36,751 nt of DNA. It comes from Octopus bimaculoides (Eukaryota). Of the stretch, positions 6,396-34,430 are shown one piece after another; the stretch's first letter is position 1; the number at the start of each line of letters is the position of its first letter. The stretch is from positions 97,395,030-97,431,780 of the forward strand of contig NC_068988.1 in the NCBI RefSeq assembly GCF_001194135.2, given 5' to 3'. A model generated the notes under the pieces. The model saw nothing but the letters and a program-made list of their open reading frames with translations, was not told where the DNA came from and did not search any database. Both the position numbers and the translations under genes were made by a program.

Positions 6396-6545
6396 GGAAA
6401 GATAGAAATATAGAGTGGTTAAGGCAGATGAAGAGAGAGAGAGAGACAGCAACCCGGTGATTGGGAGTGAGAGAGGGAGAGCAACAGACAAAAGCGGGAT
6501 GAAAGAGAGGGACAGACAGAGCGAGCGAGATAGATAGATAGAGAG

Positions 6546-6577
<32 letters not shown>

Positions 6578-6849
6578 GTTGGATTGCAAGAAAGGAAGTG
6601 TCACATTGAAATATCTTTTTTAAATACAAAACTGTTCCACCCAAGAAACTCGTAACACACACAGACAACTCCACAAACACACACTCTATGACTTTCTCTA
6701 TCTCTCCCACAGTCTGTGTCTGCCTGCCGATCGATCGATCGTACGATCGATCTCTCTCTCTAACCCTCAACAAGTTTTTCCCAAACCACACACTGCCCTA
6801 ACATAAACACCCCTCCCCAACCATTTACTTACTGAATCCTTCTCTTTCT

Positions 6850-6880
<31 letters not shown>

Positions 6881-7699
6881 TTCATACACATAAAACAACA
6901 TAAAAATACGCACACACCGAAACAACTATTCTTCCACACTCTTCTCCATCTCTCTGTCTGCCTGTCTGCCTGTCTCTCTCTCTTTTTTCTCTCTCCATCC
7001 ATACATACATACATACATCTATAAATATAAATACACATATATCTATGTATACACACACATACTCATCTCACGCGCACACATGCAAGCACGCACACACAGA
7101 TGCATGCTATAGTGAGACAAACAGCAACGCCTATTCACCTTCTCTCACCCCCTCTCTTAATCCCCCCTCTCTATCTCTATCATTCCCTCTCCCCCTCCCT
7201 CTCCCACTTACTATTCTCCTTGTCAGAATGGTCGAATATTACATTTCAATCAGATTTCAATTAACTTCTCTGTGTCACACATGCGTGTGTGAATATAAAC
7301 GCATATCTATATCTTTATCCTTAACTATACGCGTGTGAGTGGTTATCTATATATGTGTGTAGGTAACGGAGGGGGGGGGGGCGGAGTTAGAGGGTGTTTA
7401 AATATATTTTAGGAAAGTTGAATTTTTTCTTCTATATATTAATTTCTTAAATTTGTTTATAATTTTTTTCAGAAGCTAACATTTTAATAAAATTTATTGT
7501 CGACGACGGCAGAGATATTTATAAAACTCACCAGGAGTTGTACAAGTGTGCGAGCGCGTGTAGTTTATGTATATATGTATAATATATATACATGTGTGTG
7601 TATGCGCGTTCGCTTATGCGCACGTGTGTGTGTGTATATGTATCTCTCTATATATGTATATATACATATATAGATACCTACTTCCGTAAGAGACGAAGA

Positions 7700-8015: not shown

Positions 8016-8296
8016 GTGAAGGCGCAATGGCCCAGTGGTTAGGGCAGCGGACTCGCGGTCGTAGGATCACGGTTTCGATTCCCTGACAATCTCCCCGAAA
8101 ACTACGTTAAGGGTACGTGCAGTGTCCGTGGAGTGCTCAGCCACTTGCACGTTTATAAATGAGCTGCGACGTCACTGGTGCCAAACTGTATCGGCCCCTT
8201 TGCCTTTCCCTTGAATAACATTGGTGGCATGGAGAGGGGAAGCTGGTATGCATGGGCGACTGCTGGTCTTCCATAAACAACCTTGCCCAGACTTAT
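8016..8296 (+). mobile_element. tRNA-derived SINE, family B
   Basis: A box TGGCCCAGTGG (8028-8038), B box GGTTTCGATTCCC (8071-8083). Body AAACTACGTTAAGGGT...GGAGTGCTCAGCCACTTGCA also occurs at about 34360-34430. Confidence 0.8.
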
Positions 8297-12224: not shown

Positions 12225-12930
12225 TATATCACCTAGATTGGTTGTCTCGTGCCGAGTCGGCTCCGCTAACCTCACCATTCGCTCCATTCCCCTCGTGCTC
12301 TCGCCATTCTCTTCCACGGTTGTTCCAAATATGTTACTCACATTTTCCCACCCGATTGGAGGTCTTCCGAGTGGTCTCCTCCGCTCGACAGCTGCACCAG
12401 TCCACCGGCTGTCTGTGAGCCTTGCGTCATGACCGGTCCATCGTAGCTTTGTGTGGTGCTATTCGGCGGCGACGACGCTCTTTACTCCAGTTCTATCCCT
12501 GATCTCCTCGTTCGCCGCGTGATCTCTTAACGAGATATCCGTCATCGATCTTTCTGCGCCGTAAACAGATGTTCTTCTCTCTTCGCCAAGGCCCATTCCT
12601 TACATGCGTGAATAGCATTGCAGGCAAGACTCTGCTGTTGAAGAGATTGGAGCGAGTTGTCTAAGTTGGCCTTAAGCACATCCTTCACCAAGTTGAATTC
12701 TCTCCTAATTGCTCCTACCCTTCACGGGATCTCATTCTTCATCTCTCGAGTCATAGTCACTTTTTGACGGAGACGCTCATAGCTGCTCACCTCTCCTATT
12801 TTATCGCCTCCGTCTCTTTGGCGACCGATCGCTACGCACTCAGACCGTATGTACTTGGTTTTCGTACAGTCGATCCTCAGGCCAACCACCGAACCCCTGA
12901 AATCCAGTTCGCCCAGCATGGTCTGCAGCT
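12225..12930 (-). mobile_element. 5'-truncated, degenerate RTE-clade LINE (RT C-terminus and 3' end)
   Basis: LQTMLGELDFRGSVVGLRIDCTKTKY...IGEVSSYERLRQKVTM..EMKNEI, then ACKEWALAKREEHLFTAQRKI, matching the RTE L..VGLxINxxKTK / EVxxYxYLG / xxLFxAQRxxE pattern. Several stops and frameshifts. Confidence 0.8.
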
Positions 12931-12931
12931 G

Positions 12932-13023
<92 letters not shown>

Positions 13024-16955: not shown

Positions 16956-16956
<1 letters not shown>

Positions 16957-17470
16957 GATGACACTGGAAAAACCAAATGTTACGTAATGAATTTCATTAG
17001 CCTACAGCTGTTCCTGCTATAAGATGCGGTGGACTCTTAGTTGAGTACCATAGGATCCTATAGCTGCATGAGACCACTTTATTTGGGAAAATTACATTTT
17101 CAAAACCTACAGGCGTTGCGAGTGAGAAAATTTATGTTGATCGTTGTGGAAAGTTCGATGCCAAGTAAGAAAAAAGTATGCGAATATACGCATCTGCATA
17201 AACTTTCTCACTCATAATGCCAGTGTGTTCTGGAACTTTCTCAAATAAACTGCACTTCCTATTCAAGGCTCTGAGCAAGCTATGTTTATCTTCGTAGTTC
17301 ACAAAGAGTCCACCACATCTTACAGCAGAAACAGTTGTAAGCTAATGACGGTCATTGCATAACATTTGGTTTTTCCAGTGTCATCTCTTTGTTTTCTATT
17401 ACCATTCTATACTCATATAATATTGCATTCTGGGACCATACGCATAATGAATTCTACACCAGGTTATTAG
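16956..17470. mobile_element. Non-autonomous DNA element with long TIRs; left TIR truncated
   Basis: AGATGACACTGGAAAAACCAAATGTTA (16956-16982) is the perfect reverse complement of 17360-17386. The sequence beyond 17386 matches, inverted, the region upstream of a second copy at about 32885-32990. Confidence 0.7.
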
Positions 17471-18934
17471 TCTCACTATGCTTAAGTGACATATTAATTC
17501 CTTCAACTCAGTATACACGCACCACGCATACTCCCACATCCACACAAGCACATTATACCTAAACACAGACAATATATACATACAGACGCAACACTCATTA
17601 ACACATGCAACACACATAGACAAAGATAACTTTCACCCACACATATACACGATACACATATACACCTGTACACACACCACATGAAAAAGCAGACATCAGC
17701 TGCTACACACACCCACATACACTCACACACGTCAGTCACTCGCCCCAATTCACACTTACACACCTACACACCATTCTCACATGCACACCTCTTGTTGGGA
17801 TCACTAGCACTACTATTATCTCCCTTTCTTATAACCGCTTTTTTCCAATCCTTCGCCATGCTGGACCGCCGAACTCTACACGTTTTTTTCATTCTCTCTC
17901 TATTTTTTATTTCCTCTTCTTTTCTGTTGAAGAACATAAGCTCGAACCGCAGACGACTTTCATTTTTCCCCAGCGACAAACTAATACACTTGTCTGTTGT
18001 TCATACACCTCTATTCGTCTTTTGCTTTTCTATAAATTTCAACTATATATGTAGAGAGAGAGGAGGGGGGAGAGGAGAAAAGAAGTGGGGGAGACAGCGA
18101 CACATATATCATTAAGGCATGGATAGTTTTTGATAGATACATAAACAGACAGAATTTTCCCATTTCTCCCATTTTAGCACGTCAACAATAAAAATAAAAA
18201 GTGAAAGAGAGAAAAATGGAAGAAAGGCGGCGAAGAAGACAGGCCTAAGAAATCAACGAGTTGAACTTTAAAAGAAGACGACCAACTCCAAAGAGACAAC
18301 AAACGAACAGTTGCAGGCTGCTTGTATAGCTTCACACATTAAGATATACAGCAAACAGAACTTCATTCATTTCTCTCTTACCTTTTGTATCATGATGATG
18401 TTTGTTTTACGTTTCAAGTCTTGATCCTCCTCCAGCAATCCTATAAACTCTTCACAAAAATCTGCATGTTTTATTGTAATCCGCAAAATTGTCTTTCAGT
18501 TTTCGCGAATTTTATTTTATACATCTATGAATTTATTTTAGCTATTGTTTAAGTTTACTTGTTTTGTGCTTGGTTCTAGTTTGGGGGGGAGGGGGGAAAG
18601 CTCGACGTCTGAGTGTGTTTTGTTTATTGTCTTAAAGTTGATAATTTTTGAAATTTTTCTTTTTTCTTTGGATTCGTGGCATTTTATTGTTTTATTTAAG
18701 CGCGTATTTATATGTGTATATGTTTATGTATAGAAAGAGCACAAAAGTATGTAACAATTTTTAGTCTAAATTTATGCACTAAAGGGAAACTTCGCATTTT
18801 GTTTATACGCATATGTGCGCGCACATACACACACACACAAACACATGTTTCTCAACATACTGTGTGTACAAATACATACATATTTATATATATGCCTCCA
18901 TATATAATCATACACATATATGTATGTAATTATA

Positions 18935-20772: not shown

Positions 20773-20925
20773 CATAAGTATGTGTGACAGCAACATAGCG
20801 TTAAATCATAAGATTGCAGATAGCAATAACAGGTACAGACACAACATATGTGCAACAGTAATACAATTCTTTTCAGAGTTTTCGCTAGGTTACTGCAATG
20901 GTGTGTGTGTGTGTGTGTGTGTGTG

Positions 20926-21740
20926 TGTAAGCAGTGCAGAGCAACTCGTTGCACTCTGAACTATATTTTGACCGGAAGTCCTCGGGCACCGGGAGAAGGC
21001 CGATACAAGTGGACACATGACAAGATTCTTGCAGAAATTGGCGAGTGGACTGATCTGCAAAGGGTGAAAGATAAGCCCCAGCCGCCGCCACCAGAGGATA
21101 TCAAAGTCGTAGAGCAACGTGGAAAAGTTCTCGAGGCGAAGATGGAAAGAGACACATTGCTTGATTTGTGTTTAGTCTGAGACTGAATGATGCAAGTGGA
21201 CCTTAGAGCAGAATTGTCTTTCCAGGAGAGAGAGAGGCAACATTTCTCCGACCAGACATATTCCTGTTGCTCAAGAATACAAAAACAGTTATCGCGGTCG
21301 AGCTCACGATGCCTTGGCTCGATAAAGAAATCGAAATATCAGGACTTAGTCGACGAGGCCCTTATCAAGGGTTGGCACAGGGCCTCATTCCTCATTGAAG
21401 TCGGCCGCCGCGGTTTTCTGCCTCGGTCAGTGTGCTATTTACTGCAGAAGATAGGAACCCAAACAACTGAAGAAAACCATCGAGTCACGGTAGCTGAAAC
21501 TGGATCAAAATGGCTATGGTTGATAAAAGTCCACAAGTGGTACTCTTCAGTTGGCGAAGACTAGTTCAGTCCTTGCTGCATAACTCAGAGGAAGCTCACA
21601 GGATAAGGGGAGAAAAGCTTGTAAGCCTGAGATGTCTGCTGATAAAACAGGGTTTCCAGCTTTGCAATAAGATTAGAAGGGCTTGAAAAACCCCTGAGTA
21701 GATCCTGGTGTTTCTGCGAGCGACAAAGCATCATTAATAT
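20926..21740 (+). mobile_element. 5'-truncated HERO-like (R2-group) non-LTR retrotransposon end: degenerate CCHC finger, restriction-like endonuclease and 3' UTR
   Basis: CKQC...TLNYILTGS..APGEGRYKWTHDKILAEI, then MQVDLRAELSF..., KKSKYQDLVDEALIKGW..SFLIEVGRRGFLPRSV..LLQKIG..AETGSKWLW. This matches the GRYxWRHDxVL / KxxKYxxL / PIEVGxRGF / xWLW pattern of HERO-clade ORFs. Frameshifted. Confidence 0.75.
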
Positions 21741-24210: not shown

Positions 24211-24905
24211 ATAACTCGATGATGACGAGACGACGACAGCGATGATGCTGCTGCTGATGATGAGGGTTAGGAAAACTGGCTAAATATTTCGATATTGTTC
24301 ACAAGGGTTAATACTGTTAATGACAATAGAAATAATTGTTTTAATTGTTGCTGTTGTTTTACAACACGTCGGGCTCCGATTGGACAGAAGATTTGTGACC
24401 AAACGCATTACAACCAGCATATTCTACCCATCTCTCGGTAGTAACTTAATGAAGACTATAAACATTATGCAATGTAACCTTTTATTTCTTTGAGATGGCA
24501 AAGTGTGTTTTAAGGCTGTGGCTGTTGTTTCTAGGAGCGTATGTTCTCTTGTTTAAGTCACGCTCGTAATCGCTCCTCCTTTTAACATCTAGCTCAGTAT
24601 TCAGCCATCTTCAAGTTCCCCGAAGCTGCGCATATATACCTGGCTTTGGTCTCCAATTCTCGAGGGCGTGCTAGAAGACCCATGACAGACTATGCAGGGG
24701 CTTAGACTGTCGTGTGTTTATAGACCTCGTGGATTATATCCCTCTCCAGTTCTGGTCAGAGCAGAAGTTTTTTCCAGATAGAAAGAGAAAAATGGACCTT
24801 ACTACATGACTGGTACCTATGCTGGTCACTTGGTATGATCGTTACTTTAAATAACGGTCTTACCTTATTTATAAAACATTTATATATATATGCATAATTG
24901 CCCAT

Positions 24906-25140
24906 GGTTATATGGCGTAGTGGTTAAGAGCGCGGGCTACTAACCTCAAGATTCCAAGTTCTATTCCAAGCAGTGACCTGAATAATAATAATAATATCGA
25001 AAAATACTTTAGGAATGAGAACCCAGGTTCGAAATTACCCCAAGACACCTGATGAAGGCTGGAGGGTATATCAGCCGAAACGTTGTGTTAACAAGAAATA
25101 AGATGAGGACAAATATCCGTCAAATGTAAATAATATAAAC
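24906..25140 (+). mobile_element. tRNA-headed SINE-like unit whose 3' part contains a hammerhead ribozyme motif
   Basis: GGTTAT...GTGACC acceptor-like stem (24906-24978), A box TGGCGTAGTGG (24913-24923), degenerate B box (24956-24967), (AAT)5, then the HHR at 25044-25089. Possible TSD AATTGCCCAT (24896-24905) / AATTCCCCAT (25141-25150). Confidence 0.7.
25044..25089 (+). ncRNA. Minimal type I hammerhead ribozyme with palindromic stem III; predicted cleavage after GUU (25084)
   Basis: GACAC-CTGATGA-A-GGCTG-[GAGGGTATAT]-CAGCC-GAA-ACGT-T-GTGTT. Stem I GACAC/GTGTT, core CUGAUGA with an extra A before G10.1, stem II GGCTG/CAGCC, GAAA, palindrome AACGTT. Confidence 0.75.
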
Positions 25141-25177
25141 AATTCCCCATCTCTTAAATATAGGCCTGAAAAATTTT

Positions 25178-25838: not shown

Positions 25839-26034
25839 GCGTGAATGTATTTTGTGCTTATTTTAATTTATATTTTGTGATTCCGCATTTATTTTGTATT
25901 TCCTTTCTGATTCTGTTAGAAAGAAAAGGATGTCGCCAAAATATTTCAAGAAAAATATAGAAAAACAAATATAAAAGTAAAAAAGTTAATGAATTCAAAA
26001 TACTTCTCGTCGCCAACACCTACACACATACATT

Positions 26035-26115
<81 letters not shown>

Positions 26116-26150
26116 ACGGTTAAGAGTAGATATTAGACTTTGATCTTAGC

Positions 26151-26734
26151 CGTGATGTGATCAATAAGTATCCGGACTATTACCATAGTAACGGAGCTAA
26201 AGCACGCAGTGTAAAGCCGCTTGGCACAGATTGAGTTTGAAATCTGTTGTTCACAGACACTAAGTTTTAACGTTCTCGCTCATTTCCGCTGTTTACAGCA
26301 GTGCTTGGAAGGAACGTGTGTAGCGTGTGATCGTCGCATTGACCATGACAGAGAAAGTTGTCATTGCGAAACCTGCTCAGAGGCAGAAAGTGTATAGAGA
26401 GGAGTGTATGAGACGCACACGAGAGTACGAGTGGTTCAGACGTTTCCAAGATGGCCGACAAATGTCAATATTGACGAACGTTCTGGGAGACCCGCAACCA
26501 GCAGTGCTGAGAAAAATCGCAGATGCGCATGCAGCTGTGAAGAGAAATCATCGAATCACCATCCGTGAGTTATCAGAGGATGTGCAGATTAGTTACGGTT
26601 CAGTTCAGTCCATTATCACTGAAAAATTGGGTACGAGACGCGTGTCTGCCAAGTTTGTGCCAAAACCGCTACACACGTTCCTTCCAAGCACTTCTGTAAA
26701 CAGCGGAAGTGAGCTAAAACGCTAAAACTTAGTG
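26151..26734 (+). mobile_element. Rearranged mariner: left TIR-like end, N-terminal DNA-binding region, then an inverted copy of its own 5' UTR
   Basis: TIR-like CGTGATGTGATCAATAAGTATCCGGACT at 26151. ORF 26327-26725 has YEWFRRFQDGR...NHRITIRELSEDVQISYGSVQSIITEKLGTRRVSAKFVPK (mariner HTH2 and WVPHEL-equivalent linker). 26667-26734 is the reverse complement of 26258-26325. Confidence 0.9.
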
Positions 26735-27199: not shown

Positions 27200-27560
27200 G
27201 TAAAAATAAAATCTCTATAAACATACTTTCCCTGCGTATTCGTTGATCAGTATAACGGGAGTGCGTGCGAAACGAAGTGATGAGAAAAATTGTCATGAGC
27301 AGTTTGCTGGATGTGGTGACTAAGCGGTGGGTACGGTTTATAAGCCATGTGCTTCGATTACCGTGGGAGAGATGTGCTACCATCGTAACAGAGTGGATGC
27401 CGGAAGCAGGAAAAAGAGCGAATGAAAGACCAATGAAGAGGTGGAGCAGTAAGTTCCGGGCGACAAGATAACGATGGCAGTTGGCCCGAGTGGAACTAAG
27501 AGGAAAGCGAGCAATCCAGATGTCTGGAGGAAGCTCGCTGCTCGTTGCGCCGATAGATTT
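27200..27560 (+). mobile_element. RTE-clade LINE 3' fragment
   Basis: VRNEVMRK...KRWVRFISHVLRLPWERCATIVTEWMPEAGKRANERPMKRW matches the RTE terminal RxxWxGHVLR...EWxP..GKRxxGRPxxRW motif. Confidence 0.75.
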
Positions 27561-32884: not shown

Positions 32885-33130
32885 CGGCTGATGTAGAACT
32901 CAATACACGTATGGTCCAGAACACAATGTTAGATGAGTAAAGAGTGGTAATAAGAACAAAGAGACGACACCGAAAAAAAAACAAATCTTCTGCAATGAAC
33001 TTCCTTAGCTTACAGCTGTTTCTGCTATGTGCTGGACTCTTAGTTGAGTACCTGGATAACATCCTATAACTTCATCAGAACCTTGACTATGAAGTGCACT
33101 TTATTTGGGAAAGTTACATTTTCATAACAT
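32885..33130 (+). mobile_element. Second, more diverged partial copy of the long-TIR element at 16956
   Basis: 32962-33130 aligns with 16956-17105 (TACAGCTGTT.CTGCTAT..GGACTCTTAGTTGAGTACC...CACTTTATTTGGGAAA.TTACATTTTCA). 32885-32961 aligns with the reverse complement of about 17387-17465. Confidence 0.7.
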
Positions 33131-33385
33131 AGCTCACCATCTCGTTTGTGTGAGAGTGTTTGTTTGTACTTTTCATATACACCCTTGTACATACGCATGT
33201 ACATATATTTACATGCATATGTGCATACATATATATATATATATTACAAACAAAAATAAGAGGAATGACCAGCAAAAGTGGACTCCTATATGCTAGAAAT
33301 AGATGCTGAATCATCTAACCACGAAAAAAATATATGGTTGGACGTCCTGTGTCTAGTTCTGGAAATTACATCGCATATCGACAGT

Positions 33386-33450
33386 CTACGCTGACGATCC
33401 TGCAGATATTTATTTATGTAAATTTTAACAGGTGAAACCATGGTACGTAG
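33386..33450 (+). ncRNA. Type I hammerhead ribozyme, copy 1; predicted cleavage after GUA (33445)
   Basis: CTACG-CTGACGA-T-CCTG-[26 nt]-CAGG-T-GAA-ACCATGGT-A-CGTAG. Stem I CTACG/CGTAG, core CUGACGA and GAAA, stem II CCTG/CAGG, palindromic stem III ACCATGGT. Non-canonical U10.1-U11.1. Confidence 0.8.
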
Positions 33451-33906
33451 GTTAATCGATTTTATTTAGTATTTTTTCATTTGTCTTGCCCTTTTACAGT
33501 CTGTTGTGTCGCTGAATTTTTACTGAGAACATATATTTTTTTCGTTGTTAGATGATTCGGCATCTATTTCTAGCATATAGGAGTCCACTTTTGCTGGTCA
33601 TCCCTCTTATTTTTGTCTGTAATATAATTTTAATGTTCGGATTTTTTTTAATATGCTAGACCCCTGGTTCAAATTGATTAATATCAGTTTCTACCCTCAT
33701 AAATAAATTTTTATACAATAATGTTTCTCAAACCGGAAAATTAGCTACAAAAATTTATTAACTGCTGAATTATTTCCGGACTTAGCGCGCCAGATTGAAG
33801 ACATTTAAAAGGATACACTGAATGTAATTTGTAGAACTCTACACGTGCTCCCTTTCGGTTGGAAGTCCTGTGTCTAGTTCTGGAAATTACATCGCATATC
33901 GACAGT

Positions 33907-33971
33907 CTACGCTGACGATCCTGCAGATATTTACTTATGTAAATTTTAACAGGTGAAACCATGGTACGTAG
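33907..33971 (+). ncRNA. Type I hammerhead ribozyme, copy 2; predicted cleavage after GUA (33966)
   Basis: Identical to copy 1 except one T>C change in the stem II loop; offset exactly 521 bp. Confidence 0.8.
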
Positions 33972-34334
33972 GTTAATCGTTTTTATTTAGTATTTTTTCA
34001 TTTGTCTTTCCTTTTTACAGTCTGTTGTGTCGCTGAATTTTTACTGAGAACATATATTTTTTTCGTGGTTAGATGATTCGGCATCTATTTCTAGCATATA
34101 NNNNNNNNNNNNNNNNNNNNNNNNNNNNNNNNNNNNNNNNNNNNNNNNNNNNNNNNNNNNNNNNNNNNNNNNNNNNNNNNNNNNNNNNNNNNNNNNNNNN
34201 NNNNNNNNNNNNNNNNNNNNNNNNNNNNNNNNNNNNNNNNNNNNNNNNNNNNNNNNNNNNNNNNNNNNNNNNNNNNNNNNNNNNNNNNNNNNNNNNNNNN
34301 NNNNNNNNNNNNNNNNNNNNNNCCTGTAATCCAA

Positions 34335-34430
34335 GAGGGGCGAGCTTTGTAACATTCTGTGCCACGCTGAATCTCCGCTGAAACTACGTTAAGGGTCCGT
34401 TAGTTTGTGGAGTGCTCAACCACTTGCAGT
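34335..34430 (+). mobile_element. Family B SINE body fragment
   Basis: AATCTCCGCTGAAACTACGTTAAGGGT...GGAGTGCTCAACCACTTGCA matches 8089-8152. Confidence 0.7.

What the first reader, a model, noticed from the sequence alone, without database searches (positions are those of the whole stretch)
33337..34100. Tandem hammerhead ribozymes 521 nt apart in a non-coding direct repeat: candidate octopus retrozyme / circular RNA generator
Seen: two copies of CTACG-CTGACGA-T-CCTG-loop-CAGG-T-GAA-ACCATGGT-A-CGTAG at an exact 521-bp period. The 6 differences between repeats all avoid the core and stems, and the unit encodes no recognisable protein. Established: minimal type I HHRs with palindromic stem III occur in the pseudo-LTRs of Penelope-like elements and in metazoan non-LTR retrozymes. 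There, tandem HHRs excise a monomer that can circularise. Inference: a plus-strand transcript would release a 521-nt monomer (33446-33966), a non-autonomous unit mobilised by a Penelope RT/GIY-YIG in trans. I know of no described octopus family like this but cannot check. Caveat: U10.1-U11.1 replaces the usual G-C pair.
Basis: partly seen in the sequence, partly recalled or inferred. Interest (0 to 1): 0.88.

Follow-up and report, generated by a model that had tools for sequence, protein, structure and literature searches.

The report
Penelope-style hammerhead ribozyme repeat pair
Two near-identical copies of a small self-cutting RNA motif (a hammerhead ribozyme) sit 521 bases apart in a non-coding mobile-element insertion in an animal genome. 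This kind of element is already known from many invertebrates, so it is a plausible new example rather than a new kind of thing.

Summary
A 244-nt direct repeat (33336-33579 and 33857-34100, 6 mismatches, spacing exactly 521) carries two complete type I hammerhead motifs. All core nucleotides are present. Stem I is 5-8 bp, stem II is 4 bp, and helix III is the palindrome ACCAUGGU. Predicted cleavage is at 33445|33446 and 33966|33967.

My descriptor expects about 0.002 chance hits per window. A second, independent, textbook Penelope-type minimal hammerhead lies at 25049-25084.

A 97-nt inverted partial copy (33240-33336) abuts copy 1. The complex starts at a (TA)n tract. Copy 2 runs into an N gap. 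This matches the published insertion signature of Penelope-like elements: an inverted 5'-truncated copy plus a partial tandem, often breaking assemblies.

A 664-nt dimeric transcript folds without constraints into the double-hammerhead extended helix III, 15.8 kcal/mol better than two monomeric hammerheads.

Weak points: U10.1·U11.1 replaces G-C (precedent: axolotl HHR_Amex2), there is no Rfam match (Rfam also misses the textbook motif), and the fold z-score is unexceptional here. No other copy could be retrieved, so family size, covariation, an autonomous partner and circular RNA are all untested.

Verdict: a probable new member of the known group of hammerhead-bearing Penelope-derived elements, also called non-LTR retrozymes. 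Interest is modest.

The parts
33186..33252 (.). (TGTACATACATA)n/(TA)n microsatellite bordering the left end of the complex. It is the likely integration target and probably the tail of the SINE-like repeat at 32890-33160.
   Evidence: TRF row 33186-33252; sequence; alignment of the repeat with its two other copies in the window.
33240..33336 (-). Inverted partial copy (module A') of 33530-33626. Read as a 5'-truncated inverted copy whose 3' end faces the (TA)n tract.
   Evidence: Inverted repeat I1: 97 nt, 96% complementary. The three-way alignment shows private changes in each copy.
33336..33626 (+). Direct copy 1: module C (33336-33529, holds hammerhead 1) plus module A (33530-33626). It lacks module B, so it is read as 5'-truncated.
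   Evidence: Direct repeat D1; BLAST of the unit against the window.
33383..33453 (+). Hammerhead 1, type I. Stem I 33383/6-33390 with 33446-33450/3. Core CUGACGA 33391-97. U10.1 33398. Stem II 33399-402 with 33429-32 and a 26-nt loop 2. U11.1 33433. GAA 33434-36. Helix III ACCAUGGU 33437-44. A17 33445. Predicted cleavage 33445|33446.
   Evidence: Sequence; descriptor hit with stem I 8 bp and stem II 4 bp; centroid fold shows stems I and II.
33627..33856 (+). Module B: 230 nt of unique, AT-rich, non-coding sequence between the two direct copies. It is either the 5' part of a 521-nt element or further upstream sequence of a longer element.
   Evidence: No other match in the window; stops in all frames and no Pfam hit.
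33857..34100 (+). Direct copy 2 (module C plus the first 50 nt of module A), cut off by the assembly gap.
   Evidence: D1 copy 2, 98% identical.
33904..33974 (+). Hammerhead 2. Identical to hammerhead 1 except 33934 C (33413 T in copy 1), which turns a predicted U·G pair into C-G in the loop-2 hairpin. Predicted cleavage 33966|33967.
   Evidence: Descriptor hit; difference list; pairing from the constrained fold.
33446..33966 (+). Predicted 521-nt RNA released by cleavage at both hammerheads. GC 33.6%; 61% of bases paired in both the linear and the circular MFE.
34101..34322 (.). Run of 222 N that hides the right end of the complex: the rest of module A, any further units, and the right flank or target-site duplication.

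Best explanation
This is a composite insertion of a short, non-coding, hammerhead-bearing retroelement of the Penelope-like-element (PLE) lineage. It lies at a (TA)n tract.

**Layout, left to right.**
- an inverted 5'-truncated copy (97 nt)
- a direct 5'-truncated copy (291 nt: modules C+A)
- a longer direct copy (modules B+C+A, 521 nt if complete) that runs into an assembly gap

This layout places two identical type I hammerheads 521 nt apart on the plus strand.

**Inferred mechanism.**
1. A plus-strand read-through transcript pairs the two palindromic helix III segments (ACCAUGGU) into an 8-bp helix.
2. This forms a double hammerhead that cuts after A33445 and A33966.
3. A 521-nt RNA is released with a 5'-OH and a 2',3'-cyclic phosphate end.
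4. A cellular RtcB-type ligase could circularise it.
5. A PLE RT/GIY-YIG enzyme supplied in trans could copy it back into TA-rich DNA.

**Shown versus inferred.** The sequence anatomy, the improbability of a chance motif and the thermodynamic preference for the dimer fold are shown. Transcription, cleavage, circularisation and mobilisation are inferred. So is the question of whether 521 nt is a true replicating unit (a retrozyme in the strict sense) or only the spacing left by one partial-tandem insertion.
For: - **Complete hammerhead core and type I topology in both copies**. The cleavage triplet is GUA.
- **Chance expectation about 0.002 per window**. An independent textbook PLE minimal hammerhead lies at 25049-25084 in the same window. 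Real hammerheads are therefore far denser in this genome than chance hits.
- **Architecture**. The direct repeat starts exactly where the inverted arm ends (33336), with a 1-nt overlap. The outer end of the inverted arm lies in (TA)n. Each of the three A modules has private substitutions. Copy 2 runs into a gap. Craig et al. (PMC8557442) describe PLE insertions as 5'-truncated partial tandems, often with an inverted 5'-truncated copy immediately upstream. They also report a microsatellite, (TA)n, insertion bias and frequent assembly problems.
- **Dimer fold.** Two 71-nt hammerheads cofold into the classic double hammerhead: -36.2 against 2 x -12.9 kcal/mol.
- **Fold of the dimeric transcript.** The unconstrained MFE of the 664-nt dimeric transcript contains the 33437-44 x 33958-65 helix, both stem IIs and one swapped stem I. 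Its energy is -160.5, against -144.7 kcal/mol when two monomeric hammerheads are forced.
- **Precedent for U·U at the base of helix II.** Axolotl HHR_Amex2 has it, self-cleaves weakly as a monomer and cleaves much better in dimeric constructs (PMC7229834).
- **Non-coding and 33.6% GC**. The unit length is within the 51-972 bp reported for retrozyme consensus sequences.
- **One compatible substitution.** The only substitution inside the motif changes U·G to C-G in the loop-2 hairpin.
Against: - **G10.1-C11.1 is replaced by U·U.** That pair is described as highly conserved in PLE and canonical hammerheads (PMC4209133). Activity may be low or absent.
- **No Rfham... Rfam hammerhead model matches**. 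Rfam also misses the textbook motif at 25049, so this negative carries little weight.
- **Only two near-identical copies exist**, so there is no covariation evidence.
- **No further copy was found.** Nothing in the window and nothing in the metagenome, viral, prokaryote-genome or protein collections. Those collections do not hold cephalopod genomes.
- **The monomeric hammerhead fold is not the MFE** (-8.3 against -12.9 kcal/mol), and the 77-nt motif is no more stable than shuffles (z = -0.28).
- **The 521-nt fold z-score is not exceptional.** z = -5.8, but 4 of 20 control segments of this window score as low.
- **No RT/GIY-YIG ORF was detected.** None lies in the unit or among the ten long window ORFs I scanned with Pfam.
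- **The right end is hidden by the gap**, so a target-site duplication and the full layout cannot be checked.
Confidence: 0.6

Rival explanations
1. Strict retrozyme reading. A 521-nt unit is the replicating entity of an established multi-copy family. It is transcribed from arrays, excised by the hammerheads and circularised. A Penelope-like-element (PLE) reverse transcriptase copies the circle by rolling-circle synthesis, and this directly generated the 1.47-unit array. The A|B junction (33626|33627) is then just an internal point of the circle.
For: - There is a type I hammerhead in each resolved unit.
- The unit is non-coding, has low GC and is of permitted size.
- The double-hammerhead fold is favoured.
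- The plus strand folds 24 kcal/mol better than the minus strand.
- Retrozymes coexist with PLEs in a mollusc (PMC7229834) and are argued to derive from PLE pseudo-LTRs.
Against: - Only 1.47 units are resolved, and there is no second locus.
- The outer end of the inverted arm maps to the same point (33626) as the junction between copy 1 and module B. That is what end-to-end joining of discrete 5'-truncated copies predicts. On a circle it needs a shared TA-rich priming site.
- The unit is longer than the about 170-400 nt typical of invertebrate retrozyme circular RNAs.
- The fold z-score is not exceptional for this window.
Confidence: 0.2
2. A foldback or MITE-like DNA transposon (33240-33626, with 97-nt terminal inverted repeats) plus a partial second copy. 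The hammerhead-like motif would be a coincidence with no RNA function.
For: - The arms are long and near-perfect (97 nt, 96%).
- A TA|...|TA duplication can be drawn at 33240 and 33626.
- There is no Rfam match.
- U·U sits at a position that is normally G-C.
- The motif alone is not thermodynamically distinctive.
Against: - The chance rate of the motif is about 0.002 per window. The real hit is much stronger than the threshold: an 8-bp stem I and a 6-nt palindrome inside helix III.
- Copy 2 lacks the left arm. It begins exactly at the inner edge of that arm, which would be a coincidence for a truncated MITE but is automatic for an inverted copy plus partial tandem.
- The apparent TA duplication is uninformative because the left flank is (TA)n.
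- A genuine PLE-type hammerhead lies 8 kb away.
Confidence: 0.08
3. The hammerhead element is real, but the tandem and inverted arrangement is an assembly artefact. Separate family copies or haplotypes would have been stitched together next to a scaffold gap in a short-read draft.
For: - Copy 2 ends exactly at a 222-N gap.
- The window has seven N runs.
- PLE insertions are known to break whole-genome shotgun assemblies (PMC8557442).
Against: - Both copies, the unique 230-nt spacer and the inverted arm lie in one ungapped contig, 33240-34100.
- The copies differ at 6 of 244 positions and each A module has private changes. This is not a collapsed or duplicated identical read pile.
Confidence: 0.1

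Closest known systems
Metazoan non-LTR retrozymes (Cervera & de la Peña 2020, PMC7229834). Examples: Mytilus galloprovincialis repeats of 350-390 bp and axolotl Rtz_353 carrying HHR_Amex2.
   Same: - Type I hammerhead in each unit of a head-to-tail, non-coding, low-GC repeat.
- A weak, palindromic helix III implying action as a dimer.
- A U·U mismatch at the base of helix II, as in HHR_Amex2.
- Coexistence with Penelope-like-element (PLE) hammerheads in the same genome.
   Different: - Only 1.47 units are seen, at a single locus.
- The unit is 521 nt, against about 170-400 nt for the invertebrate circular RNAs.
- Loop 2 is 26 nt, and no loop 1/loop 2 tertiary contacts are recognisable.
- An inverted partial copy is attached.
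- There are no expression or cleavage data.
[quoted passage not shown] 2017, as cited in PMC6765202).
   Same: - Type I topology with a short stem I.
- Helix III reduced to a palindrome, so cleavage is expected only as a dimer in tandem copies.
- The motif lies near the 3' end of the repeat.
- The insertion layout is an inverted 5'-truncated copy plus a partial tandem at a microsatellite (PMC8557442).
   Different: - No RT/GIY-YIG ORF lies between or near the repeats.
- Helix II is 4 bp with a long loop, rather than the 6-8 bp typical of PLE minimal hammerheads.
- U·U replaces the conserved G10.1-C11.1.
- Helix III is longer: a 6-nt palindrome inside A15.1-U16.1.
- The neighbour at 25049-25084 is the typical form.
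Newt satellite 2 and schistosome Sm-alpha/Sj-alpha SINE-like hammerhead repeats (Forster et al. 1988 and Ferbeyre et al. 1998, as cited in PMC6765202 and PMC7229834).
   Same: Short, non-coding, genomically repeated units carrying type I hammerheads. In newts the weak helix III makes them active as double hammerheads.
   Different: Those are very high-copy satellite or SINE families with canonical G10.1-C11.1 and loop-loop contacts. The copy number here is unknown.
Plant LTR retrozymes (Cervera et al. 2016, PMC4918200).
   Same: A non-autonomous retroelement in which two hammerheads in direct repeats excise a non-coding RNA that circularises.
   Different: The plant elements have type III hammerheads inside true LTRs, with a primer-binding site, a polypurine tract and 4-bp target duplications. 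They have high GC and are mobilised by Gypsy elements. None of these features is present here.

Membership tests
Hammerhead ribozyme, type I | Invariant core C3 U4 G5 A6 N7 G8 A9, G12 A13 A14, an A15.1-U16.1 pair, and H17 (not G) at the cleavage site | tested here: met
   CUGACGA 33391-97, GAA 33434-36, A33437-U33444, A33445. The same holds at +521.
Hammerhead ribozyme, type I | Three helices around the core, with stem I open (the 5' and 3' ends) | tested here: met
   Stem I is 5 Watson-Crick pairs, or 8 with G·U. Stem II is 4 bp plus an inner hairpin. Helix III is 2-3 bp as a monomer and 8 bp as a dimer.
Hammerhead ribozyme, type I | G10.1-C11.1 pair closing helix II (highly conserved; PMC4209133) | tested here: not met
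   U33398·U33433 in both copies. A natural precedent with the same mismatch exists: axolotl HHR_Amex2, which is active mainly in dimeric constructs.
Hammerhead ribozyme, type I | Match to a curated hammerhead covariance model (Rfam) | tested here: not met
   No hammerhead family hit at the gathering threshold or at E<=10. As a control, the textbook Penelope-like-element minimal hammerhead at 25049 is also missed, so the test lacks power for this class.
Hammerhead ribozyme, type I | Conservation and covariation of stems across independent copies | tested here: inconclusive
   Only two copies, 98% identical. There are no changes in the core or stems (expected about 30% of the time by chance) and one U·G to C-G change in the loop-2 hairpin. 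No other copies were retrievable.
Hammerhead ribozyme, type I | Site-specific self-cleavage | not testable with these tools
   Needs in vitro transcription.
Metazoan non-LTR retrozyme | Type I hammerhead in every unit of a head-to-tail repeat (operational definition in bioRxiv 10.64898/2026.07.22.740005) | tested here: met
   Two hammerheads, same strand, 521 nt apart. Only 1.47 units are resolved before the gap.
Metazoan non-LTR retrozyme | Non-coding, low-GC unit of a few hundred nt | tested here: met
   521 nt and 33.6% GC. No Pfam domain in any of the six frames. The reported consensus range is 51-972 bp, and typical invertebrate circular RNAs are 170-400 nt.
Metazoan non-LTR retrozyme | Highly self-paired RNA | tested here: inconclusive
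   Plus strand: MFE -131.2, z = -5.8. Minus strand: -107.2, z = -2.8. However, 4 of 20 control 521-nt segments of the window reach z <= -5.5.
Metazoan non-LTR retrozyme | Dispersed multi-copy family with arrays; abundant linear and circular RNA | not testable with these tools
   No animal genome or transcriptome collection is available. There is no second locus in the window.
Penelope-like element (autonomous) | ORF encoding a reverse transcriptase plus a GIY-YIG endonuclease between the repeats | tested here: not met
   Stops in all frames and no Pfam hit in 33240-34100. The ten long window ORFs I scanned have no Pfam hit. So this is at most a non-autonomous or truncated derivative.
Penelope-like element (insertion architecture) | 5'-truncated partial tandem (pseudo-LTR), often with an inverted 5'-truncated copy immediately upstream; microsatellite, (TA)n, target; prone to assembly breaks (PMC8557442) | tested here: met
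   Inverted 97-nt copy, then a 291-nt copy, then a copy of at least 474 nt. The left border lies in (TA)n and the right end lies in an N gap.
MITE / TIR DNA transposon | Every copy bounded by both terminal inverted repeats and a target-site duplication | tested here: not met
   Copy 2 has the internal part and the right arm but not the left arm. The homology stops exactly at the inner edge of the left arm. A TA duplication cannot be assessed because the left flank is (TA)n.

The most novel reading that the evidence does not exclude
This is the first cephalopod non-LTR retrozyme. It would be an active family whose 521-nt RNA is excised by a double hammerhead carrying a non-canonical U10.1·U11.1. 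The RNA would accumulate as a circular RNA in the animal's tissues and be mobilised by a resident Penelope-like element. The same genome would also hold SINE-like elements carrying the minimal hammerhead form (25049-25084).
Probability: 0.2. Interest if true: 0.5.

Novelty: new member of a known kind. Interest (0 to 1): 0.33.

Why it matters
If the element is active, it would extend ribozyme-made circular RNAs (retrozymes) to cephalopods. It would also add a natural hammerhead that tolerates U·U at the 10.1/11.1 position, and it would give a compact locus for testing the double-hammerhead mechanism.

It also illustrates a link proposed in 2020 and argued phylogenetically in a 2026 preprint: a Penelope-style partial-tandem insertion automatically creates a retrozyme-like hammerhead pair.

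None of this changes current understanding. Hammerheads in Penelope-like elements and retrozymes are already known to be widespread in invertebrates, including molluscs.

Tried and rejected
- **Rfam at three scales** (whole window; 901 nt; 85 nt): no hammerhead family hit. I then showed that Rfam also misses the textbook minimal hammerhead at 25049, so I did not count this against the motif.
- **Looking for other copies.** All of these came back empty:
  - BLAST of all modules against the window
  - two metagenome scans
  - two viral-contig scans
  - one prokaryote-genome scan
  - a protein search with the 73-aa minus-strand ORF that spans hammerhead 2
  - exact-product look-ups of three window ORFs
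  - a protein search with a retroelement-like ORF to identify the taxon
- **Literature.** A full-text search for the motif's own sequence found only an unrelated paper. Supplement searches found nothing. Lünse et al. 2017 is not held.
- **A third hammerhead-like match, 33011-33078 on the minus strand.** Rejected as chance. It lies in a SINE-like repeat, and its CUGAUGA box is not conserved in the two other copies of that repeat.
- **The excised RNA as unusually structured.** z = -5.8 looked striking, but the control segments show it is not unusual in this repeat-rich window. I downgraded it to inconclusive.
- **Differences between the copies as evidence of selection.** Rejected as non-significant (plus my arithmetic).
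- **tRNA-like head of the 25049 element.** Not confirmed by ARAGORN or Rfam.
Full report
**1. The observation**

The stretch 33336-33579 is repeated at 33857-34100. Each copy is 244 nt, they are 98% identical, and the start-to-start spacing is exactly 521. The six differences are at 33343, 33413, 33459, 33488, 33491 and 33546.

Copy 2 is cut off by a run of 222 N (34101-34322), so only about 1.47 units are resolved.

- stem I: CTACG (33386-90) with CGTAG (33446-50)
- core: CTGACGA (33391-97)
- T33398
- stem II: CCTG (33399-402) with CAGG (33429-32), closing a 26-nt loop
- T33433
- GAA (33434-36)
- helix III: ACCATGGT (33437-44)
- A33445

Stem I extends to 8 bp if two G·U pairs are allowed. Read as RNA, this is a type I hammerhead with every invariant core nucleotide, a GUA cleavage triplet and predicted scission at 33445|33446. 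The second site is 33966|33967. The 521-nt monomer 33446-33966 is numbered correctly.

**2. Is it more than chance?**

I wrote a descriptor requiring:
- CUGANGA
- 8-70 nt closing at least 4 bp, with one unpaired base allowed at either end
- GAAA
- a palindromic or hairpin helix III of up to 14 nt
- U, then H
- a stem I of at least 5 bp

I ran it on first-order Markov sequence with the window's composition. It gave 3 hits in about 100 Mb of strand, or about 0.002 per window.

In the real window it finds the two repeat copies, which count as one independent event. It also finds a second, unrelated hit at 25049-25084.

That second hit is a textbook Penelope-type minimal hammerhead. It has CUGAUGA, a bulged A, G10.1...C11.1, GAAA and helix III reduced to the palindrome ACGU. 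These are the features listed by Cervera & de la Peña (PMC4209133).

Two independent hits against an expectation of 0.002 mean that real hammerheads are common in this genome. This fits the reports of active Penelope-like elements in Octopus vulgaris (PMC13282606) and of 235 Hammerhead_1 loci in the giant squid (PMC6962438).

A third, weak match lies on the minus strand at 33011-33078, inside a SINE-like repeat. Its core is not conserved in that repeat's two other copies, so I treat it as chance.

Zero hits in about 40-45 constrained positions out of 244 is expected about 30% of the time.

**3. Negative and calibrating results**

- No Rfam hammerhead model matches at the gathering threshold, nor at E<=10 on 901-nt and 85-nt slices. 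Rfam equally fails on the textbook minimal hammerhead at 25049. The negative therefore says little for this class.
- The isolated 77-nt motif is no more stable than shuffles (z = -0.28). Its centroid fold does show stems I and II.
- The monomeric hammerhead fold (-8.3 kcal/mol) is not the MFE (-12.9).
- The main departure from the consensus is U10.1·U11.1 in place of the highly conserved G-C pair.
- There is a documented natural precedent. Axolotl HHR_Amex2 has a U·U mismatch at the base of helix II. It cleaves 22% in one hour as a monomer and much better in dimeric constructs (PMC7229834).

**4.

- Immediately left of copy 1 lies a 97-nt inverted copy, 33240-33336, of 33530-33626. The two are 96% complementary.
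- Its outer end runs into a (TGTACATACATA)n/(TA)n microsatellite at 33186-33252. That microsatellite looks like the tail of a SINE-like repeat.
- The direct repeat begins at the very base where the inverted arm ends (33336).
- Calling 33336-33529 module C, 33530-33626 module A and 33627-33856 module B, the locus reads (TA)n | A-inverted | C A | B C A... | gap.
- Each of the three A modules has its own private substitutions. This fits copies that have diverged since a common origin.

This is the published signature of insertions of Penelope-like elements (PLEs). Craig et al. [quoted passage not shown] They also report a bias for microsatellite targets, (TA)n, and frequent breaks in shotgun assemblies.

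The alternative reading is a MITE with 97-nt terminal inverted repeats. It requires copy 2 to be truncated exactly at the inner edge of the left arm. It gains nothing from the apparent TA duplication, because the left flank is (TA)n.

**5. Coding capacity and context**

All six frames of 33240-34100 are full of stops and have no Pfam match. The unit is 33.6% GC.

The ten long window ORFs I scanned have no Pfam domain, and I saw no RT/GIY-YIG remnant. The element is therefore non-autonomous or a truncated 3' portion.

**6. How it would work**

Two 71-nt copies of the motif cofold into the classic double hammerhead. That fold has an intermolecular 8-bp ACCAUGGU helix III, swapped stem I strands and both stem IIs intact. 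Its energy is -36.2 kcal/mol, against 2 x -12.9 for two monomers.

In the natural context, the unconstrained MFE of the 664-nt transcript 33337-34000 (-160.5 kcal/mol) contains the following:
- the 33437-44 x 33958-65 helix
- both stem IIs
- the swapped stem I, 33446-51 x 33906-11

That is a complete active-site fold for cleavage at 33445|33446. Forcing two monomeric hammerheads costs 15.8 kcal/mol.

This matches the dimer mechanism proposed for newt, axolotl and PLE hammerheads (PMC4209133; PMC6765202). Cleavage at both sites would release a 521-nt RNA. By analogy with characterised retrozymes, an RtcB-type ligase would circularise it, and a PLE reverse transcriptase would copy it (PMC7229834; bioRxiv 10.64898/2026.07.22.740005). 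These steps are inferred, not shown.

**7. Is the 521-nt RNA specially structured?**

The plus strand folds to -131.2 kcal/mol (z = -5.8). The minus strand folds to -107.2 (z = -2.8). About 61% of bases are paired, in both the linear and the circular fold.

However, 4 of 20 control 521-nt segments of this microsatellite- and repeat-rich window score z <= -5.5. I therefore rate this evidence as inconclusive.

**8. Related sequences**

I could not retrieve any. The searches that came back empty were:
- BLAST of all modules against the window
- two metagenome scans, two viral scans and one prokaryote-genome scan
- two protein searches
- three exact-product look-ups

None of these collections holds cephalopod genomes, so absence there says nothing about copy number. 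For the same reason I could not confirm that the window is from an octopus.

Literature searches found no described cephalopod retrozyme and no paper printing this motif.

**9. Comparison with what is known**

The locus works like a dimeric non-LTR retrozyme and meets that group's operational definition: a type I hammerhead in every tandem unit, non-coding, low GC, and a size within the reported 51-972 bp.

Its layout is that of a PLE-type insertion. It fails the definition of an autonomous PLE because it has no ORF. It departs from canonical hammerheads at positions 10.1/11.1.

Whether 521 nt is a genuine replicating unit or merely the spacing left by one partial-tandem insertion cannot be decided from one locus. 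The outer end of the inverted arm and the junction between copy 1 and module B map to the same element position (33626). That mildly favours end-to-end joining of discrete copies.

**10. Verdict**

The most likely reading (about 0.6) is a composite PLE-style insertion of a non-coding, hammerhead-bearing element. A by-product of that insertion is a retrozyme-like pair of dimer-competent hammerheads.

The rivals are:
- the strict active-retrozyme reading, about 0.2
- a chance motif in a foldback DNA transposon, about 0.08
- an assembly artefact producing the tandem, about 0.1

This is a new member of a known kind. Interest is about 0.33.

Noticed in passing
window 25044-25089 (+); surrounding element about 24900-25150: An independent, textbook Penelope-type minimal hammerhead: GACAC-CUGAUGA-A(bulge)-GGCUGG...UCAGCC-GAAA-CG-U-U|GUGUU. 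It has the canonical G10.1-C11.1 and the palindromic ACGU helix III. It lies in a non-coding element of about 250 nt that begins right after a short (TA)n tract. The element's 5' part looks tRNA/SINE-like to my eye, but ARAGORN and Rfam do not call it.
   Followed up: partly
window 33011-33078 (-): A weak hammerhead-like match (stem I 4 bp, helix III CAGCUG) inside a SINE-like repeat. The CUGAUGA box is not conserved in the repeat's two other copies, so it is a chance match.
   Followed up: yes
window 32890-33160 (+), 17200-17460 (-), 16956-17109 (+): Three copies (72-77% identical) of an unclassified SINE-like repeat. The two at 16956-17450 form an adjacent inverted pair. The copy at 32890 carries the microsatellite tail into which the hammerhead element is inserted.
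   Followed up: partly
whole window: A gap-rich draft animal scaffold: seven N runs of 10-716 nt and 57 tandem-repeat rows, mostly (TA)n, (CA)n and (CT)n. No Pfam domain in the ten long ORFs scanned. Several ORFs look to me like decayed transposon proteins (for example 26327-26725, 20848-21564 and 27256-27468), but nothing confirmed this.
   Followed up: partly
window 34370-34428 and 8088-8149: A short stretch just after the gap is 84% identical to 8088-8149. This is another dispersed repeat, unrelated to the hammerhead element.
   Followed up: no
control segments, e.g. window 6501-7021, 26001-26521, 17001-17521, 12501-13021: Ordinary 521-nt segments of this window reach MFE z-scores of -5.6 to -10 because of microsatellites and inverted repeats. 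Fold z-scores are therefore a poor indicator of functional RNA in this genome.
   Followed up: yes
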